From contig OZ059895.1 in assembly GCA_964057225.1 (NCBI GenBank), positions 7,626,001-7,690,000 on the forward strand: a stretch of DNA of 64,000 nucleotides, written 5' to 3'. The translations under genes and the position numbers were made by a program. How positions within the stretch are numbered: the stretch's first letter is position 1; the number at the start of each line of letters is the position of its first letter. Source of the DNA: Auanema rhodensis. Its lineage: Eukaryota; Animalia; Nematoda. This document shows, piece by piece, positions 6,411 to 29,000 of this stretch. A model generated the notes under the pieces. The model made no database searches. It was not told the origin of the DNA and was given only the letters and a program-made list of their open reading frames with translations.

Positions 6411-7694
<1,284 letters not shown>

Positions 7695-17565: not shown

Positions 17566-20500
17566 ATGGTAAGTGGGACAGTTTCAGAAAATCAAGAATC
17601 TAGGACCTATAATGAATGGAGCTGGCTTGAAGGTATAAATATTTTTTTGAATATGTTAATGAAACTTGATTTGTTAGATTCTCCAAATGAGAACAACGTA
17701 CCTTTGAAAAATGTGAATAATCCTGTTAAAGTGAATGCTACACCTGAAAAACCTAAAAACAAAGTTGTTGCAACAAATGTGGGTGCTTTTGTTATCTTAT
17801 TTTATTTTTGTTCTACATATTTTAGCAAAGAAAGCAAGCAGAAGAAGTTTTAGCAAACTATGCTAATAATATGCGGAAGCTTATTATTACAGCTAGACAA
17901 CAAATAAATAGTTTAAATTCTGAAGTAATTGAGTTGAATCAGAAGTAGGAATCTTTATTAAAATAATTAACATATGTTGAATACAGGTTAGAATCAAGTG
18001 GGATAATTCAGTGCCCAGCATGTTGCTTTAGATTTAAAGAAAGAAATCATCGACAAGTTCCAAAATATATTAAGGTGTTGCATTAATCATACTTTAAACT
18101 GAATACAACAATTTTGGGTTTTTCGAGGAAAACTGTCTATTGAAATGGAGTTTGGCTCCCTTGATCTTTTATCCGAATATCTTACACTGAATGGATTGGA
18201 TAAAATGGCTGATGGTTTACCAACATTGATGGCACCTGAAGTAGCTGAAGAACCATCATTAGCAAATACAGGAAGCATTCTGCCAACCCTGGAAACTGAA
18301 GTTAGTATTTTGAATTATGTACGAGTTTATTTATTACTTCATAGAAATCAAAAAATAATACCGGTAAATTCCAAAAGAATGTAACTTCAAATTCCCAAGT
18401 TGAAAAAAATTCTTCAGCCAAACCTAAATGCAATCCCAAAATTCGAAAAGAACCTGTGCCCTCTGCGAGCAACAGGTATCACTTTTCTTTTATATAACCT
18501 TAATTGTATGCATTTTTAAGATGTGAAAACAAAGCTGTTTCAAAATCTCTAAGCGTAGGCCAAAAACGAAAAGCTTCTCCAATAAAACATCCTCAATCTC
18601 GAAGACGATCGCCTGAAAATGTTTGAAAATATTCAAATAAATAAAGTTTTTTCTGTACTTTCAGAAGAAAACCAGAGTTGAGGAATGCTCAAGTAGTAAA
18701 ATGAGAAATGTAATATTCACATATTCTGGTGTTTTATCCGAATCAGTTTTTTTCTTAGGGTGCTTGTGATGTCCGTTTGAATTCTAGTTCATGTCGTCGA
18801 ACTCGGGATGAAGATAGAAAAGAAATGGTTTCATTCAATGTTTTAATATGATTTAGGTTATTGTTGTTCAGGACATCGTGCCACGTTCTCGAAAATGTTC
18901 TCGGGACAATGATAAATCTGTTCAAAAAAGTTCACGAAACGATGAATCTTATAAGGAAAAGGACAAGAATAACAGAAAACAGGAAGAAAAAAATTCCACA
19001 AAGTTGACACGAAAGAGCGCTCGACATTGTTTGAATAATTCGAATGAAACGACCGTAAGCAATTTCACCCGAATAGTTTTCGTTTATACCGTTTTTAATT
19101 ATCAGACGCACATTTCTAGTAAAGGATCGCGTTCTGAGAAAATAGAAATAGTTAAGGTTTGTCGCTTAAGTGCTTCTGATCTAAAATATTTTTTCGGAAT
19201 TTTTCAGAAAGATCGAACTCAAAAGCGCAGTTTTCCCTCTCCCGAGAAATCTACCAATGTTGAGGTTTAACTATTTGAACTATATATTTTTAATTCTTCA
19301 TTTAAGAATAAAAAGATCGACGATAAGTCATACGGATCCGGAAACTCTTCCAAGCTTGAAAATAATTCTATAGCCTTAGAAGATGGTGAAATCGACGATA
19401 ACTTTGTTATGAAGAGTGATCAATCTAAAGATCAACTTCTAATAAATTCAGGTGATTATCAACAGTCAAAAAATACAATTGCTAGTAAAATAAATTCTGC
19501 ATTAGAGGTGAGCTTCTATAATAAAAATCTTAGTATATCTTTATATTGAAGAATTTATCCGATCCGTGTACTTCTCATAATAGATTATGTTGGATAGATC
19601 CTAATGAACTTTCTTTCTGTGAATTGAACGAAAATCAACCTATGTATTTCCGTCATGTGAACATTGGTGCTATTAGTGATAATCAATTTTTAAATTCTTG
19701 TGATACTCTTGTACCCTGTGATAATAGAACAGGCAATGTTCTTCTCCCTAATGAGAGCCCGTTAGTTATTTCTTAAATTTGCTCACTTTATTTCGAAATA
19801 TTTTTAGCATTGCCTTGTTAAATTGTGTTAATAACTCGAAACAAAACGCGCAGTTCGATCGATTTAATGAAGAAGATCCTATTCCACAGCAAACACATCC
19901 AGAAGCTCGAATTAGTTTTGCGAGGTTTTTTTATTTTTAATTCCATATAAACTATTCATTTATTTAATTTCTAGTGATGAACCATCTAGTTGTGGGAGAA
20001 ATCTCATTCAAACTTTTCCTAAAAAGAAAGAAAAAGAAGTTGCTGACCGAATCGCCGTTATTTCAGAAAATTCTAAAAAAGTAAAATTAGTTGAAGATGA
20101 TCAAAACATATTTGTTGAAAATCTCCAGCCATCATGTATCATCGAGGCTCCCAGTACAATAGAAGCTCCCAGTACGATAGAAACTCACAGTACTATCAAT
20201 TCTCCCAATGTTGTCAAGGCTAGCAATATTGTCGAGGCTACTAATGCTGTTGAGTCTATCAGTACTGTTAAGTCTACCAGTAGTATCAAGGTTCCCAGAT
20301 TTATCCAAGCTCCCAGTACTGTTGAATCTACCAGTACTGCCGAGTCTACTAGTAGAATTCCTCAGAATCATAAGACTATGGAGAATCCCAAGATTATGGA
20401 GAATTCCAAGACTATGGAGAATCCCAAGACTATGGAGAATCCCAAGACTATGGAAGATCCAAAAACTATGGAGAATCCCAAGACTATGGAAGATCCCAAG

Positions 20501-21131
20501 ACTATGGAAGATCCAAAAACTATGGAAGATCCTAAAACTATGGAAGATCCTAAAACTATGGAAGATCCTAAAACTATGGAAGATCCTAAAACTATGGAAG
20601 ATCCTAAAACTATGGAAGATCCTAAAACTATGGAAGATCCTAAAACTATGGAAGATCCCAAAACTATGGAAGATCCCAAAACTATGGAAGATCCCAAAAC
20701 TATCAAGACTCCCAGTAGTATCAAGGTTCCCAGAACTATAAAGGCTCCCAGCACCTTCGAAACTCATAATACTGCCGTTAGTTCTATAGAAGCTTCTAGC
20801 GTTGTCGAGGTAGCTAGGTCAATAAAGCCTAGTGCTGTGGATGTTCCTAGGTCTATAGATGCACCCAATAGTGCGGACGTTCCAGAAAACAACAAAAAAT
20901 TGGAAACTACTGCGATTTCTGATGATGAAATGGAATTTGGTGTTGTTGTTTCATGTGAAGAGGACATTCTAAGTGATAATTTTGAAAGTGATAATGAAAG
21001 CTGTAATAGTATGATTTCGAATATGCGATTAGACCTTATGTCCTATTTTAGATTTTGAAGTTGTTGATTCAGAGAATGATATACTCGACGAACAATATTC
21101 AGACCAAGAAGAGGAATTTGAATCATCCTGA
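17566..21131 (+). CDS. Uncharacterised protein with FLASH/CASP8AP2-like N-terminal coiled coil, CxxC motif, basic low-complexity middle, (EDPKTM)n repeat and acidic tail; multi-exon
   Basis: Exon 17826-17944 reads QRKQAEEVLANYANNMRKLIITARQQINSLNSEVIELNQK, followed by LESSGIIQCPACCFRF. Later exons are in the ORF track (18145.., 18878.., 19546.., 20378..). Ends EEEFESS* at 21131. The start codon is uncertain. Confidence 0.7.
20372..20701 (+). repeat. Coding 18-bp minisatellite (GAAGATCCTAAAACTATG, about 18 copies; EDPKTM)
   Basis: Directly visible tandem units. Degenerate 6-aa units flank it on both sides (about 20141-20880). Confidence 0.97.
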
Positions 21132-21718
21132 TAATACATAATGTGAGCCCTTATCTTTGATCTTATATATCTATATATATGAACTTATAAATAATAAAGC
21201 AGCTGTTATTGTCTGTATTATTTTAAAGCACCGTAATATGAGAAATTGCAAGATATCCAATGATATCATAGTGACTAGACTATAAAAGAAATGAGAAATA
21301 ATTACTCTAATGTAGACATTAGCCACGAAATACTACAAATAGAAAGAAAGGATGAACGAGAATCAGAAACCAGAACAAAAAGCGTACAAGAGTTACACAA
21401 AAGTACCAGTTTAGCGATGTCAGCAACATCTATGAGCAAAAGCAAATAAGGGCAATAATAAATTTCAAATATAGTTTCAGTTTTTCGCACATTATAATAT
21501 TGGATATAGCCTATCAGTGAACATTAGTGTCTCAAAAAATAATCTACAAAATCTTGGTTCTGAATGAACAAAAGTAGAATAAGAGCTAATGTACTAACGT
21601 TCTATTTCGGATCATTGGACACATAGAACATAAACAAAAGATTTTCGGTGAAATATTAAAATAGCATAAACGATGAGAAATTTGAGAAAAGCGTCTTTAG
21701 AAGCGAATGAGCGGTATT

Positions 21719-23268
21719 CTACAAACATTTATATTCGATAGATAGTTCTTCGCCGCCCCAGCTTGTGGCTGGCATCCTTCGGTAGCCGAGCGGGCAATTA
21801 CAGAAAACAAGCGTTGAAGAGATTGATGAAACTGCTTTTCCTGAAACAAACAACAATTATCAGCAGAAAATATAATAAAATATCTAATCAGACTGCCTGT
21901 TCTCCTAACACGTGGCAAAAAATAAGTGGAAGTGCCGTTAAACTCTGAGAACATATTCCAACGAGGCAATAAAGATACTGATAAAAGGAGAAGACGCGAA
22001 CAAGAGATGGGATAAATGACTGTGAACTGCAGACAAAGCACAAAAGAGAAAGAAAAAAAGGAAAAGATACACGACAGAACAAAACAATGGAGGAGGACAA
22101 AGAAATTAAATGAGTCATCGGCGCTGTAACTAAAAACAGCAGCAATCAGGCAAAATTTGATTTTTTTGTGGAACAGCAGACTTCACGCAATGGCAGTTGG
22201 GATAAGTTGCTGTTCATTTTACCCTATGAACTAGCAAGTTTGCTGATTTTAAATCGAATGTAATTATTAACACATCTTAATTGTCCTTTTCTCTGAATTA
22301 GTGAATAAATCTCTGCTACTCTCTCTTGATTTCTCAGTCACTTGCAGACATAATTCTGCCTCGGGGTGTCGATCAATCCCCCTTTACCCTCTATCAATGA
22401 GCCACACAACAGTTGTCCTGACCCACGACAGAAAAGTCTGCAACAATAAAGCTCCAATGCACGATGAAGAACAGAAGAAGCGACAGAATGAGATGAGGTT
22501 GAATAACTCAATAGAATGCTAACTAATAAATATCACAACCAAAACTTTCTTAACTTCCGGTACACTTATCTTTCAATATATTTAAAATGTTGTTAATTAG
22601 ACAACTGTTACTTGTCTAAACTAGATGGACCACCCCCATGCATGCGCGAACTCCCTTTTCTTAGTTTCACTCAATTGCAAGCAGAAGAAAGTCTTGAAAA
22701 AAGAGAAAGAAAAAAAAACTTGCCGGTATTCTCCGCGGGCCCGATCACACGAATTACTCCACGCCGTCCCTAAAAAAAACTTTTTCAAATTTTCGAACGA
22801 ACTTTAAGACATACCGTGCATGGCAATGCAATTTGTTTACTGACATCCTCACAAAATGTGAGTTGAATCGTTTCATCTAACTTCATGCTTCTTGAATCAA
22901 TAGAAGAATCACATGTAGCGTTTCCTGCACATTCACAAAGGTCGAAACTAAAGAAAGCCACTTTAAGAATAAAAACAGAAAGATAGCTATGTGATTTCCA
23001 GAGTCTACTTACTTATCAACATCCGGTGTTTGACTGTAGTCGAAGGGCACTGTATCAAACACTTCATCATATAGAGGAATCATTCCAGATCCATAACCTG
23101 AGGCATCCTAGAAGATATTATTAAAAATTTGAATAAGCATCGTAAACATACCTCCTCGATTGCTGGAAAAGTTCTGAGCTGTGCAGAGCAAGCTTGTACT
23201 CGGGTACAAGTAGCAGCCCAGAGCGGTGACACTAAGAAAATTGAACACAACAGGTAACTTTGCAGCAT
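21719..23268 (-). CDS. Secreted cysteine-rich Argos/giant-lens-like protein, 170 aa, 5 exons
   Basis: Exons 23268-23152, 23107-23013, 22947-22815, 22769-22724 and 21840-21719 (513 nt, in frame). Signal peptide MLQSYLLCSIFLVSPLWA, then 10 Cys in a 6+4 arrangement. Intron 4 needs a GC donor. Confidence 0.75.
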
Positions 23269-25039
23269 TCTCCTCTAAAACAAGAAAATCAAGTTAAAAA
23301 ATCGTAGGATACACAAAAGAATGGTTATGAATTTTAAACATAAGATTAGCATGATATTAATATTGTTCTTTAGTTCAGCTTAAATGTGAAACGCTAATAA
23401 AAACATCAAATAATATAACTTTGTAATCTACAATTAATTACAAAAATCATATTAAACACAAACTTGTCAAACGATAAAATGGAAACGGAACATTCGAATG
23501 TTTAGGCTGTCAAAAAATTGAAAGCTGCCAAACATCAGCTGGCGTTTTTATCAGCTTGATAAGTTTACTAATCACAATGAAAGAAAAATATAAGAATTTA
23601 GCAGATATGACAGATAAAGAAAATTCAAACATGGTTATAAATCACAGTAGAATAAACTGTGATGAAGTAATCAATTATCTTGGAAGAGAAGTGAAAGACA
23701 TCAGTATTATTGCAAAGTACAATAACTCTGATTACGAAGAAAACAAGGTTGGCAATTAAACTATTGGATAAGTCCGAAATGAAAGATAAATGGTAAAAAA
23801 GAGCTTGACACCTTTCAATTCCGCAGGAATTTCATTATCACCCCCCGTCTCCATCAATCCGCCTGGAGAGAATCGAGTGCACAACGGGACCCCGAGCAAA
23901 TGACTGAGATAGCTGGTGTCTTTCAATGCCTCCGCCTCTAATCTAACCTTATGACCCCTCTGGCCATCTCAATAGAGACACTATTAAAAGAGATATTGAG
24001 AGGGGTGAGAGATACCGGCAATACAAGATAAAGACATATCACAAAGTAGCAGATTGAGGGGAGAATGAGAAGAATGGAGAGGAAACACATATCTGACAAC
24101 ATAGGAAACTCACAGATTTTCTTCTTCGGGGCTTCGAAGGTAGATCAGTAAGACGAAATAGGCGTCAACTCTAGAATAACAAAATAGTAAGAGTTCTAAT
24201 AAAACAATAATATTCTAAAATCGGATTCTTAATATTTCAAACATAACAACATAAAAATGTACATTCAAATTTCTGGTTTTACTAAACAATATGCCACTTC
24301 AGACATTCTGATTACAAAAGCTAATAAAAATCTTTACCGGAAATATGATCTCCTCTGATTTTCCTAGATACAGGAAGTGTGTTACCAAGTTCGCTGCTCT
24401 CTTACGCTATTATTCTGGAAAATCAAATTCCCAGGATATAAATAAAGCAAGCAAAAAAATTATATATTTATAAAAAAAGATAAAATAGCATACATTTCGA
24501 GATCTAAAAAAATCGAATATTAATATAACACTTTCATTTTGGTTGCAATTACAAAGAAACTACTATCTTATAGGAAAAAAACAATTAATAAGGACGAAAA
24601 CTACGATCAACACAATGACGAATGGGAAAACCCGTAATTATTTCAGGCATGCTATTAACTATTTGTTTTAATTCAGCAGGAGGCAACCAAGAATATGGTG
24701 AAAGAGCATAACGAATTACCTTAAATTAAAAATAAATCAATATAAATTACTAGATGATTGATACTAACAAGATTTCTGTCATATTCTACACGCATGTACC
24801 GATTTCCATTTTGTCCTGTACAGTACTCTATTTTACCGCCATCTCGAGACATCAATGAAGAAACTACCAGCATATCTACAATTATTTTTATAAGCACCTA
24901 TTATAGTATCATACTAGAATTGAAAAGATTTACTTTCATTTACTAACTTAACCAATAAATTAGAAAAATTTAGAAATATATATTAGCAGAGAATTAAATC
25001 AATTGGTTGTGAGAAATTCGTCACTGGGTTTGTGTATTG

Positions 25040-25095: not shown

Positions 25096-26063
25096 CATGT
25101 TATCTTAAAAGAAATGTATTCTAGACATGTCAACTGAAGTGATTATTTTGAACTTCTAATCTTTTTTAAATTTCTACACTGATTAGCATTGTTAATTTCC
25201 CCAAAGGATTCCTTCAATTTGTTGTCGACAAATGTTTTCAATTTTCTGTAGCTTAGGCATACACTATACAGCATTGTTTTATTTTTAACCCAACTGCACC
25301 AGTACTTCTTAATTATTTTCTAAGAAACATTGGGCATAAAGCAATATGCAATCAACAGTTTAATGTTTATCTCTGTTTATTTATCAGTTTTTATACATTC
25401 ATTAAAAACAAATAAGAATTAATATGGTTCATTATATTCCTGATTATAAACCATGAAACTAAGATTTAATATGGTAAGATGTTGTACAAAGAACCAATTT
25501 ACACGAGACATAAGGATGTCTGAGAGAAAATACGAATGAGATATAATTGGCAGTAAAACAGATGTATCTAACTATACACTGGGGAAAGACGGTGATTATC
25601 AGACACCTGTCCTAGATAAGCACTATATACAAAGTGCCTTTCGAATAGTTCGCTGAGCAAACTTGGAAAAAAATTATAATGAGGAAGAGGAGATACTAAT
25701 TAATAGAACGGAGAATATCAATGCGAACTACCCCATCGAATATAGAAATCTCGACCCGATTTCCCAACGCGCATCTGCAGTACACCGAACAAAGGTAGAC
25801 GGCGTCAAAGAAGCAAGCACAACCAATAATAAAGAACTTCACAAATAAATAAATAGATAGATCCGATAAAGTAGAGGTTGGGGTTTCGTGAATAAGACTA
25901 CATACATAAATAAAGTGAGAATATAATTAAATAGCCCACATAAAAAATTATGATAAAAAAACCGGATTAGAACCTTAACGAAGGGGTCGGCAACGCAGTT
26001 TGACCCTACCGGTGCTTATCAATACCTAGCTAGTAACTAACAGTAGTATAAGAATTTAAAACA

Positions 26064-29000
26064 TCATGCAACAACTGCCATCGACCCATTATCAGATCTG
26101 GTGTCCTTGATTTGAAGTGGACTCTTTTCGATTATGCCATTCTTTTTATCACCGAAGCCATTTTCAAGACAGGTCCTCTTTGATGGAGGGCTCTAAAAAT
26201 ATTACTACGTAAACAGCTAGTTGATAAATAGTTACGTCGTCTCGGCTTGTTCCTCTTTTTCCTCCTTTACCTACTTGAGCTACAGGAACAACATGTGTAT
26301 CTCCATTTATGTTAGCTTTATCGCTTCCGGTATCTACGTTATCAGCAGAAACATCGCTGGATTCCTCTTCGAGCTCAGATTTTACCGATGACTTTTTACC
26401 TAAAGTAATTAATAAAACTTTTTCCAATCAAAAATTTTACTTACAGTTTTTATTCTCAGTGTTGGAAGAATTTCCAGATGCCGCAGATACTTCTAATTTA
26501 CTAAGAGCTCCTTGAATTTCATAGAGAATATCAGCGAACATTCCTGCTACACGAGAATCCATCTAGGAAAAAAAGTAAAAAAATTAATGTTTTGAAAATA
26601 ACTTACCAATTGACTCATTGTAAATTGTAGTAGTCGTTGTTGATGCTTTAAGTAATACTTATACGCTTCAGGCACCTTGATCAAATTCCGAAGAATGGTA
26701 GCTGCCCTTCTTAGCATTCCTACAGATGTACCCATCATTTCTGGATTCTCTCTAAGAGCAGCGATTCCATGACTTTGCATAACTTGATGCATTGTTTGAT
26801 CGGCATGCTCGATGAAGGCAATTAAATGTGGAATGACAGTTGTATCATGAGCAGTGACAAAGCAAACTGCTTCAGATGCATTACATAGTGCGTTGAGAAT
26901 AACTATGGCGAATTCTCTGAAAACTTATCATATACACAAATATATCTTACTCTTTTACCTGTTATGAGAATCTTCTGACAAGTTCACCAACTTCGTCAGG
27001 ACATGGGCAAACTTTTCTAACCTGGGCCATGATCCCGTGGATATTAACATGTCTACATTTCTTTCCAAAACAGACATTTTACAAAGAATTTCCAAACAGT
27101 AGTTTCTTCAAAAAAAAGTTATAAGTAACGGGTATTCACAACAATACTTACCTCACAGAAGTTGCTGCAGGTGGAATAGGGTCAATAGCTTCGGGAACAC
27201 TAGATACACTCCACCTCAACAATCCATCGTAAATTGGATAAGACAGGGTATCGTCGACATCAAAAAGATCAAGCTGGAAGTACAATATTTATCGACATAA
27301 TCAATGAAAATACTTACCGAAGCACTCATATGGCACAACATAACAAAAGCATCATCTCTAAGTTGTTGAGCAGTTTCAACCAACAAACGCTCCCTATTGT
27401 CATCATGTTCCAAAAGAGCTACTGCTTTAGCACGAGAAACCTCATAGGATTCGCGTTCAGGAAGAGATCCATCCTAAGAAATAAAATTTCATGTAAAGAC
27501 ATATCATCTTTGAACGTACCGGTTCAACTTTAGTAGGCTTAATTCTAGTTACACGAACTTCCTGTGCCATCAAAGACAAAAACCTGCCAATCATAAAGAG
27601 TACACCATTATGTCTACAGAGAAGTTGTTCATTTCCAGGTAAGAAAGAAAAACCCCGTAAAATGTTAGAAAGAGCTAACGCTCTCATTGCCTGAATAGAG
27701 ACAAAACATAAAATAAATACTTAGAAAATATTCTCACAAGTCTATAGAAGAATTCATCCTTCTCACTAAGAGCACTATGGCGAGGCCATCTAAGTTCATA
27801 TTCTATAGGTACATCAGATAGTTCGACTTTTTTAGACCTCCGATATAATAAAATCTCAGGAACATCCTGCAACAGAAATGATTGTTAAATAAAAGTTTTT
27901 ATAAAACTACTTCATCATCATCTGGGACTTCTTGCTTAACGTTAATATCCGTGGGGACAACTGCATCCGTACTCTCATCAGAGGGATGCAGTGAAAATCT
28001 TGGTCCTGGTTCAGCGCTTGACGCCTCCCATTCAGCCTTTAATCTTGAGGCAATTCTTTCAGCAAGGCCACCACCAAGACCTAGTTTAGATCTTTCTTCA
28101 ACATAAGATGTAGTTAAAGATTCTATAATTAAATAATTCAGTAAGAGAAAAATAATAGATTCAAACCGTCGCTTTCGACACTTGTGCTTTGTTCTAACAT
28201 TATTCGACGTTTTAGCGATTCAGGCATCTCGGCTTCTTTTACTTGAACTTTCCGCCCGTTTCGAGATTGCTAGAACCAAAATTTACAAAAATTATTCAGT
28301 GAAAATACACTTACCTTGGTATAGTTTACTTTCTTTTCAACGTTTTTTACATTAACAAGATGTTTTACTTCTTGCCGAATAGTTGAAGCCAGTATAGTCA
28401 TCATACTATCAGATAGAGTATCTTGAGCGAAAACTTGTTTACGAGTCGGTTCCGTTAGCTAAAAATTTGATTTAAAAATTATTTGACTCAATAAAAAAAA
28501 TCAAGTGGGCTTACTGGGAATGTTTCGGGATAAAGTAAAGATAATGTGGCCCAGAAGTGTTCAATAATAACGTTCAAAATTGATGGTATTTGAGCAAGCG
28601 ATGGATGAGGATTAGTATCGTCATACAATAACACGTTTAATGCATTAATAGCCCAGATTGCTTCTGTCTCAAGTCCACTTCTAAGAGCCATAACCAAGCG
28701 CCTTGGAGTAGCCTTCAAATGAAATAAAAAATTTATATTTCTAAAAACTAACTCACATTTATTAAATCCCTAGCTAATAATTTCCTTCGTCTTTTTTGGC
28801 TTATAGTAGTAGCTTCAATGCTGCCAGCAGGGAATGTGTGTAAATGTGAAAAAGATGAAGTAGTTTGTTGAACTGACATAGCCTAAATAAACGGTTCAAA
28901 AAACGAAGAAAAAAAATCTGTACAGCTGATGGATATCCTGCTGGATGAGCCTGAGGACCCGGACGATGAGGGGTGGCAGGGGAAGGTGCATGAACTACAG

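What the first reader, a model, noticed from the sequence alone, without database searches (positions are those of the whole stretch)
21719..23268. Secreted two-domain Argos-like protein: candidate nematode EGF-ligand trap
Seen in sequence: a 170-aa spliced protein, SP-ATCTRVQACSAQ..NFDLCECAGNATCDSSIDSRSMKLDETIQLTFCEDVSKQIALPCTGRRG..LVFCNCPLGY..IEYKCL*. Its Cys spacing (C-x5-C..CxC..C..C, then C..CxCP..YxC) mirrors my recollection of Drosophila Argos domains 1 and 2 (CAPNAVCS..QCRCP..C..DKTRHYKMC; LPVC..IVHCRCP..LFAC). It also has an insertion in domain 1 at the place where Argos carries its long insertion. Argos domain 3 is missing. The insertion contains EEDASGYGSG, a typical acidic Ser-Gly glycosaminoglycan attachment context. 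Established: Argos inhibits EGFR by sequestering the ligand, and I know of no characterised Argos for the nematode LIN-3/LET-23 pathway. Inference: a matrix-tethered ligand-binding protein with three-finger-like folds. It could instead be a scoloptoxin-11-like secreted protein.
Basis: partly seen in the sequence, partly recalled or inferred. Interest (0 to 1): 0.78.

Follow-up and report, generated by a model that had tools for sequence, protein, structure and literature searches.

The report
Nematode two-domain Argos-fold secreted protein
This roundworm gene really does encode a small secreted protein whose predicted shape matches the first two of the three domains of the fly EGF-trapping protein Argos, but it lacks the third domain Argos needs to clamp its ligand, so it is an uncharacterised member of a recently described protein group rather than a demonstrated EGF trap.

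Summary
A five-exon minus-strand gene (23268-21719) encodes a 170-aa protein with an N-terminal hydrophobic leader and 10 mature cysteines. The doubtful exon 4-5 join uses a GC donor. It is supported because the Auanema orthologue has the same five exon sizes with a GT donor at that position, and the Loa loa orthologue is one uninterrupted genomic ORF. The gene is single-copy, under strong purifying selection (dN/dS about 0.03), and belongs to a family of at least 22 uncharacterised proteins from rhabditid, strongylid, ascarid, spirurid, filarial and steinernematid nematodes.

So this is a divergent two-domain "two-finger toxin" (2FTX) fold protein. Khilji et al. 2025 already described that superfamily, including nematode members and the three-domain C. 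elegans M6.4. D3, on which Spitz binding relies, is absent, so the EGF-trap reading is untested and unlikely as stated.

The D1 loop carries the C. elegans chondroitin-attachment motif (12 of 22 members) and an invariant P-x-Y-D-E. Strongly conserved non-coding blocks lie in intron 4 and upstream.

The parts
23152..23268 (-). Exon 1 (39 codons): ATG, hydrophobic leader (about residues 1-19), then the first Cys pair, C21-x5-C27. A ttttag acceptor-like site lies 8 nt upstream of the ATG.
   Evidence: The exon length is identical in Auanema. The leader is read from the sequence and from the model's helix 2-12; no signal-peptide predictor was available.
23013..23107 (-). Exon 2 (95 nt): the flexible acidic insertion loop of domain 1.
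   Evidence: pLDDT is below 50 at residues 40-46 and 50-53 of the orthologue model. The family profile matches here (E 0.086).
23096..23107 (-). D-A-S-G (residues 40-43), which matches the C. elegans chondroitin attachment motif E/D-G/A-S-G.
   Evidence: The motif is taken from PMC8418075. It is present in 12 of 22 family members. Occupancy was not tested.
23063..23077 (-). P-L-Y-D-E (residues 50-54), an invariant linear motif in the disordered loop. It could be a sulfotyrosine or docking site (inference).
   Evidence: P-x-Y-D-E is present in 22 of 22 members.
22815..22947 (-). Exon 3 (133 nt): core of domain 1 with C75-x-C77, C83, C103 and C114, and an N-A-T sequon at 22914-22922.
   Evidence: all five Cys are invariant. 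The N-x-T sequon at this position is present in most members.
22724..22769 (-). Exon 4 (46 nt): start of domain 2 (G-R-R-G...R-V-I-G), ending in phase 1.
   Evidence: G116, R118, R122 and G125 are invariant.
22722..22723 (-). Non-canonical GC donor of intron 4 (G|GCAAGT).
   Evidence: Auanema has GT at the homologous position. Loa loa has no intron at all.
21719..21840 (-). Exon 5 (122 nt including TAG): rest of domain 2 with F-C144-x-C146, W158 and Y167-x-C169. The protein ends one residue after the last Cys, so there is no domain 3.
22352..22653 (.). Conserved non-coding block A inside intron 4. It is 73% identical to Auanema over 309 nt, with a core of about 100 nt that is nearly identical (visual estimate about 95%) and has 1-nt and 4-nt indels.
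   Evidence: There is no Rfam hit and no stable fold.
21931..22091 (.). Conserved non-coding block B inside intron 4. It is 81% identical over 161 nt and contains an ACTGATAA GATA-type site at about 21977-21984 on the + strand.
23484..24078 (.). Conserved upstream block, 72% identical over 629 nt, with eight WGATAR sites. It is the probable promoter or enhancer region.

Best explanation
The gene encodes a secreted, disulfide-rich protein made of two 'two-finger' (2FTX) beta-sheet domains that correspond to domains 1 and 2 of Drosophila Argos. It is the single-copy member, in this rhabditid genome, of a strongly constrained family found across nematode clades III, IV and V.

Shown here:
- the gene model;
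- conservation and purifying selection;
- the unique predicted-fold match to Argos D1-D2 and to the two-domain conotoxin Tx33.1;
- ten invariant or near-invariant cysteines;
- absence of domain 3;
- a disordered acidic loop inside D1 that carries an E/D-G/A-S-G motif and an invariant P-x-Y-D-E.

Inferred mechanism: after signal-peptide cleavage the protein acts outside the cell as a binding module for a protein partner, as Argos, three-finger toxins and Ly6/uPAR-type domains do. The acidic D1 loop may carry a chondroitin chain and possibly a sulfotyrosine, and may serve as a matrix tether or as a second contact site.

Because the D2-D3 clamp of Argos cannot form, the protein most likely does not sequester an EGF ligand in the Argos manner. 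Its partner is unknown. Conserved non-coding blocks in intron 4 and upstream suggest tightly regulated expression.
For: - Gene model and join.
- Selection: dN/dS about 0.03, with 4-fold sites 38% identical.
- Family: 22 nematode proteins, mean column identity 46%; eight of the ten mature cysteine positions are invariant, C27 is nearly invariant, and C21 is conserved where the N-terminus is complete.
- Fold: model pLDDT 82.6 and pTM 0.74.
- Foldseek finds only Argos, at E 3.9e-4 to 4.9e-3 and prob 1.0.
- The exhaustive VIA search gives Argos at 10.0, Tx33.1 at 6.3 and the next chain at 3.6.
- The Toxocara model again has Argos as its top four hits.
- For exon 3, the three best ESM Atlas clusters all carry PF11581 in part of their members (a lead only).
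- D3 dependence of Spitz binding and the existence of two-domain 2FTX clusters: PMC12514838.
- Chondroitin motif: PMC8418075, with counts.
Against: - There is no sequence-level link to Argos. PF11581 finds nothing in any exon, in the six-frame locus or in 22 relatives, and the family profile does not hit Argos chains in the PDB. Common descent therefore rests on predicted structure, cysteine count and about 20% structural-alignment identity.
- The models come from a shallow 22-sequence alignment, and both use the same alignment.
- The window's own spliced protein was not folded; an 84%-identical orthologue stood in for it.
- Disulfide connectivity and the exact loop that carries the insertion could not be compared residue by residue.
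- The chondroitin motif is lost in most filarial members.
- No expression or binding data exist.
Confidence: 0.65

Rival explanations
1. One reading: a matrix-tethered EGF-ligand (LIN-3) trap that antagonises LET-23/EGFR signalling as Argos does with Spitz.
For: The only structural relatives in the PDB are Argos and a 2FTX toxin. Khilji et al. speculate that some protostome Argos-like proteins modulate EGFR signalling. The acidic SG motif could localise the protein in matrix.
Against: Domain 3 is absent in every family member. According to PMC12514838, D2 and D3 form the clamp and Spitz binding relies on D3, and those authors judge growth-factor binding unlikely for two-domain 2FTX proteins. 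A better nematode candidate already exists, the three-domain M6.4. No Caenorhabditis orthologue of this family was recovered, though the search sensitivity is limited.
Confidence: 0.1
2. Primarily a structural or matrix chondroitin proteoglycan core protein. In this reading the Cys-rich domains merely provide a stable scaffold and the glycosaminoglycan chain is the functional part.
For: The window protein has an exact E/D-G/A-S-G match followed by a second SG. The motif is present in 12 of 22 members from several clades. It sits in a disordered, exposed loop.
Against: The motif is lost in most filarial members, while the folded domains and P-x-Y-D-E stay invariant. Selection therefore acts mainly on the protein fold and on the other motif. 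Motif presence alone is a poor predictor of occupancy (PMC8418075).
Confidence: 0.15
3. The Argos resemblance is convergent or a modelling artefact. In this reading the family is an unrelated nematode-specific disulfide-rich protein.
Confidence: 0.1

Closest known systems
Drosophila Argos (giant lens), PDB 3C9A / 3CGU
   Different: This protein has no domain 3, so no D2-D3 clamp can form. It has no long N-terminal region, and the D1 insertion is about 30 residues rather than 119. It gives no Pfam PF11581 hit. Ligand binding is untested.
Two-domain 2FTX proteins: conotoxin Tx33.1 (PDB 9FRQ), turripeptides and clusters A and D of Khilji et al. 2025
   Different: This is a single-copy endogenous nematode gene under strong purifying selection, not a fast-evolving venom gene. 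It has 10 cysteines rather than 12. It has an acidic SG / P-x-Y-D-E loop.
C. elegans M6.4 (UniProt Q21577), the Argos-like protein named in PMC12514838
   Same: It is a nematode secreted 2FTX protein of unknown function.
   Different: M6.4 is reported as three-domain, whereas this family is two-domain. M6.4 was not recovered by the family profile search. No direct comparison was possible because no reference to its sequence was available.
Centipede scoloptoxin-11 / kappa-scoloptoxin Ssd1b
   Same: It belongs to the same 2FTX superfamily according to PMC12514838.
   Different: It is a three-domain venom protein from arthropods. No direct test was done here.
C. elegans chondroitin proteoglycan core proteins (CPG-1 to CPG-24)
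   Same: The window protein has an exact match to the stringent E/D-G/A-S-G attachment motif in an acidic disordered stretch.
   Different: There is no sequence relationship to any listed CPG. The modification is not demonstrated.

Membership tests
Pfam Argos (PF11581) | Score at or above the curated 25-bit gathering threshold of the 129-position HMM | tested here: not met
   There was no hit at E up to 10 for exons 1, 2, 3 and 5, for P0001, P0004 and P0005, or for any of the 22 family members. A six-frame search of the whole genome with PF11581 gave nothing at this locus.
2FTX (two-finger toxin / Argos-like) fold superfamily, Khilji et al. 2025 | Two or three beta-sheet domains, each with two fingers, structurally similar to Argos or Tx33.1 | tested here: met
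2FTX (two-finger toxin / Argos-like) fold superfamily, Khilji et al. 2025 | Conserved cysteine framework: five disulfides shared by Argos D1-D2 and Tx33.1 | tested here: inconclusive
   There are ten mature cysteine positions; eight are invariant across the family and C27 is nearly invariant.
2FTX (two-finger toxin / Argos-like) fold superfamily, Khilji et al. 2025 | Secretory protein with an N-terminal signal sequence, found in protostomes | tested here: inconclusive
   A hydrophobic leader is present in the window protein and in most relatives, and all hits are nematodes. No signal-peptide predictor was available.
Functional Argos (EGF-ligand sequestering antagonist) | Three domains, with D2 and D3 forming the clamp around the EGF domain | tested here: not met
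   The protein ends one residue after the last D2 cysteine in the window. Nearly all 22 relatives end the same way; two run slightly past it, and none has a D3-sized extension. The structural alignment stops at Argos residue 346.
Functional Argos (EGF-ligand sequestering antagonist) | Direct binding of an EGFR ligand (Spitz, or LIN-3 in nematodes) | not testable with these tools
   No complex prediction or binding assay was available.
Nematode chondroitin proteoglycan core proteins | E/D-G/A-S-G attachment motif | tested here: met
   D-A-S-G is at residues 40-43 of the window protein. The motif is in 12 of 22 relatives. The motif definition is from PMC8418075.
Nematode chondroitin proteoglycan core proteins | Chondroitin chain actually attached | not testable with these tools
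   This requires glycoproteomics.

The most novel reading that the evidence does not exclude
A chondroitin-tethered, two-domain Argos relative that still captures a growth-factor-type ligand through a binding mode different from the Argos D2-D3 clamp. The ligand could be LIN-3/EGF or another cystine-rich ligand. The invariant acidic P-x-Y-D-E loop would replace the missing third domain as the second jaw. This would give nematodes, including filarial and hookworm parasites, a previously unknown extracellular signalling antagonist.
Probability: 0.1. Interest if true: 0.8.

Novelty: new member of a known kind. Interest (0 to 1): 0.42.

Why it matters
The family is single-copy, strongly constrained and present from free-living rhabditids to human parasites (Brugia, Wuchereria, Loa, Necator, Toxocara), yet every member is annotated as uncharacterised and none is caught by Pfam. 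Placing it in the 2FTX/Argos fold gives it a first structural annotation and a testable idea, that it is an extracellular binder. It also adds a two-domain endogenous lineage from nematodes to a superfamily described only in 2025.

It does not by itself answer whether nematodes have an Argos-type EGFR antagonist.

Tried and rejected
- **Pfam scans.** Scans of the single exons and of all relatives found no Argos hit, only sub-threshold noise such as DUF4418 and cEGF.
- **PF11581 against the whole genome in six frames.** The one candidate, on contig 6 (E 1.9, with stops inside), has no Cys-rich ORF and was judged noise.
- **Word-based protein search with exon 3.** It returned nothing, because of the length window.
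- **HMMER hits P0002 and P0003.** These are long repeat proteins that give matches to many unrelated Pfam families, such as Calx-beta and Spiralin. They are compositional false positives.
- **P0004.** It is a real relative, but its C-terminus diverges after exon 4. It is probably a mispredicted gene model and was left out of the profiles.
- **Family profiles against PDB sequences.** Only noise was found, such as LubX and IL-2R alpha at E of 0.1 or higher.
- **The Logan contig L004 as transcript evidence.** I first took its uninterrupted ORF as evidence for the splice. I rejected that because the Loa loa genomic gene is itself intronless, so L004 may be genomic. It still shows collinearity of the protein.
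- **A Cys-rich ORF inside intron 4 (22338-22511) as a missed exon.** The conserved core there has 1-nt and 4-nt indels between species, and the family profile has no gap at the junction.
- **Conserved intron blocks as structured RNA.** There was no Rfam hit, and fold z-scores were -1.6 to +0.5.
- **Literature.** Klein et al. 2008 (PMC2526102) is not held, and the supplements of PMC12514838 are not held. I therefore could not check whether this family is among its roughly 1800 hits. No paper mentions any family member by locus tag.

Full report
**Observation**

The window is low-GC eukaryotic DNA with nematode-type splice sites.
- exon 1: 23268-23152
- exon 2: 23107-23013
- exon 3: 22947-22815
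- exon 4: 22769-22724
- exon 5: 21840-21719

A script that read the window file showed that these give 513 nt, which is 170 codons plus one terminal stop. The protein begins MLQSY and ends EYKCL. It has 11 cysteines, one of them in the leader.

Introns 1-3 (44, 65 and 45 nt) are GT-AG.

I searched exon by exon, by reference. The joined sequence was built only inside scripts, to check length, frame, identity and substitution rates. For whole-protein analyses I used natural orthologues returned by the searches.

**Is the model right, and is the gene real?**

The word search with exon 3 found nothing. The full HMMER scan with exon 3 then returned three relatives:
- a 170-aa Auanema sp. JU1783 protein, 89% identical over the exon, which aligns at residues 72-115;
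- a second 170-aa relative;
- a 180-aa Mesorhabditis protein.

The Auanema genomic locus (L005) has exactly the same five exon lengths (117, 95, 133, 46, 122). At the position of the window's GC donor it has a canonical G|GTATGT.

A profile of 22 relatives searched against the window's own 181-Mb genome hits only this locus. It covers profile positions 46-82 on exon 2, 81-142 on exons 3-4 and 140-180 on exon 5. No coding piece is therefore missing between exons 4 and 5, and the gene is single-copy.

The Loa loa orthologue is one uninterrupted 630-bp genomic ORF. The junction region (R-V-I-G...S-G...F-C-x-C) is therefore genuine protein sequence and not a product of gene prediction.

The window protein is 143/170 identical to the Auanema one. 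pN is 0.083 against a saturated pS of 0.74, which gives dN/dS of about 0.03. Four-fold degenerate sites are only 38% identical.

**The family**

A profile search found 22 proteins of 145-227 aa. They come from:
- Auanema and Mesorhabditis;
- Necator;
- Toxocara and Anisakis;
- Gongylonema and Thelazia;
- many filariae (Brugia, Wuchereria, Loa, Onchocerca, Litomosoides, Setaria, Elaeophora, Cercopithifilaria);
- Steinernema.

All are named uncharacterised, apart from two automatic names that look spurious. The alignment has these invariant residues, in Auanema numbering:
- C75, C77, C83, C103, C114, C144, C146 and C169;
- P50, Y52, D53 and E54;
- L94 and D95;
- G116, R118, R122, G125 and G131;
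- W158 and Y167.

C27 is nearly invariant. C21 is conserved wherever the N-terminus is complete. Nearly every member ends one residue after the last cysteine; two run slightly past it. No Caenorhabditis protein was recovered, but the search depends on shared words, so absence is not shown.

**What is it?**

Sequence methods give no family. Pfam has no hit for any exon or any of the 22 members. The Pfam Argos model PF11581 finds nothing at the locus in six frames. The family profiles do not hit Argos among PDB sequences.

The first positive lead came from the ESM Atlas. For exon 3, the three nearest clusters all carry PF11581 in 14-31% of their members, but at a score of 0.84, which is only a lead.

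I then folded the Auanema orthologue with the 22-sequence alignment. The model has mean pLDDT 82.6 and pTM 0.74. Low confidence is confined mainly to the leader and the loop at residues 40-53. The fold searches gave:

| Search | Argos | Other matches |
|---|---|---|
| Foldseek against the PDB | 3CGU and 3C9A only, E 3.9e-4 to 4.9e-3, prob 1.0 | next E 0.44, prob 0.04 |
| Foldseek with the Toxocara model, pLDDT 77.3 | top four hits, E 7e-3 to 1e-2 | next E 0.53 |

Argos and Tx33.1 are the two solved structures with this fold that Khilji et al. describe. The Argos range 111-346 is what precedes domain 3, so the match is to D1-D2.

**Literature**

Khilji et al., Protein Sci 2025 (PMC12514838) solved Tx33.1 and named the 'two-finger toxin' (2FTX) fold. 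They showed that it equals Argos D1-D2 with five shared disulfides. They also report about 1800 protostome 2FTX proteins, nematode ones included, in 12 clusters, two of which are two-domain.

They single out C. elegans M6.4 as a three-domain Argos-like protein. [quoted passage not shown] They state that Spitz binding relies on D3 and that growth-factor binding is therefore unlikely for two-domain members.

I could not check whether this particular nematode family is among their hits, because the supplements are not held. No paper names any member.

**Mechanism**

Shown here:
- a secretion-type leader;
- two 2FTX domains, D1 at about residues 20-114 and D2 at about 115-170;
- ten conserved cysteines;
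- no D3;
- a disordered loop of about 30 residues inserted between the first two strands of D1.

That loop carries D-A-S-G-Y-G-S-G in the window protein. This matches the stringent C. elegans chondroitin attachment motif E/D-G/A-S-G reported by Noborn et al. 2018, as summarised in PMC8418075. The motif is present in 12 of 22 members but is lost in most filariae. The loop also holds P-x-Y-D-E, which is invariant in 22 of 22. An N-x-T sequon between C77 and C83 is conserved in most members.

Inferred: the protein is an extracellular binding module. The acidic loop may bear chondroitin and perhaps sulfotyrosine, and it acts as a tether or second contact. Without D3 the protein cannot form the Argos clamp. 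I put the Argos-type EGF trap at about 0.1 and a mainly structural proteoglycan role at about 0.15.

It could not be checked at the level of the loop.

**Side finding**

Synonymous sites are saturated, yet non-coding DNA around the gene is strongly conserved with Auanema:
- Intron 4 holds block A (22653-22352). It is 73% identical over 309 nt, and a core of about 100 nt is nearly identical (visual estimate about 95%) but has frame-breaking indels.
- Intron 4 also holds block B (22091-21931). It is 81% identical over 161 nt and contains an ACTGATAA GATA-type site.
- An upstream block (24078-23484) is 72% identical over 629 nt.
- An 89-nt element (21280-21192) is 89% identical.

Neither Rfam nor folding suggests an RNA. 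These blocks are probably enhancers and UTR elements.

**Verdict**

The Argos-like fold is supported by predicted structure only, and Pfam membership fails. The EGF-trap function is untested and disfavoured by the missing D3. The superfamily, its presence in nematodes and a better C. elegans Argos candidate are already published. This is a new, unannotated member family of a known kind, of moderate interest.

Noticed in passing
window 22352-22653 and 21931-22091 (intron 4); 23484-24078 (upstream): Non-coding blocks are 72-81% identical to the Auanema sp. JU1783 locus, although 4-fold degenerate coding sites are only 38% identical. Block A has a core of about 100 nt that is nearly identical (visual estimate about 95%) and has frame-breaking indels. 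Block B carries an ACTGATAA GATA-type site. There is no Rfam hit and no stable RNA fold, so these are likely enhancers.
   Followed up: partly
window 21192-21280: An 89-nt element is 89% identical to Auanema. It lies about 440 nt beyond the stop codon, between two convergent genes. It has no open frame and no codon-like mismatch pattern, so it may be a 3'-UTR element.
   Followed up: partly
window 22722-22723: This is a GC-AG intron. The donor is G|GCAAGT here, where the Auanema orthologue has G|GTATGT. The Loa loa orthologue has no introns at all (L009 1501-2130).
   Followed up: yes
window 20375-20703 (ORF 20378-21058, + strand): An 18-bp tandem array of 18.3 copies at 94% match encodes M-E-D-P-K-T hexapeptide repeats in an open frame that converges on the Argos-like gene.
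   Followed up: no
window 6411-7655 (- strand): A 414-aa open frame ends in three C2H2 zinc fingers of the EGR/Krox type. It is probably a single large exon of an egrh-like transcription factor gene.
   Followed up: no
window 25415-26402 and L005 1127-2132: A 1-kb stretch is 82% identical to Auanema. In Auanema it overlaps the 3' end of an ARID/BAF250 gene, so synteny around the Argos-like gene is preserved.
   Followed up: no
proteins P0013 (Loa loa) and P0023 (Anisakis simplex): UniRef calls these family members 'Phlebovirus glycoprotein G2 fusion domain-containing protein' and 'GP2'. No such Pfam hit was seen in the scan of the family, so the names look like automatic mis-annotations.
   Followed up: partly
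protein P0004: This relative has a family-typical N-terminal two thirds and an unrelated C-terminus without the D2 cysteines. It is probably a gene-model error that reads into the long intron.
   Followed up: no
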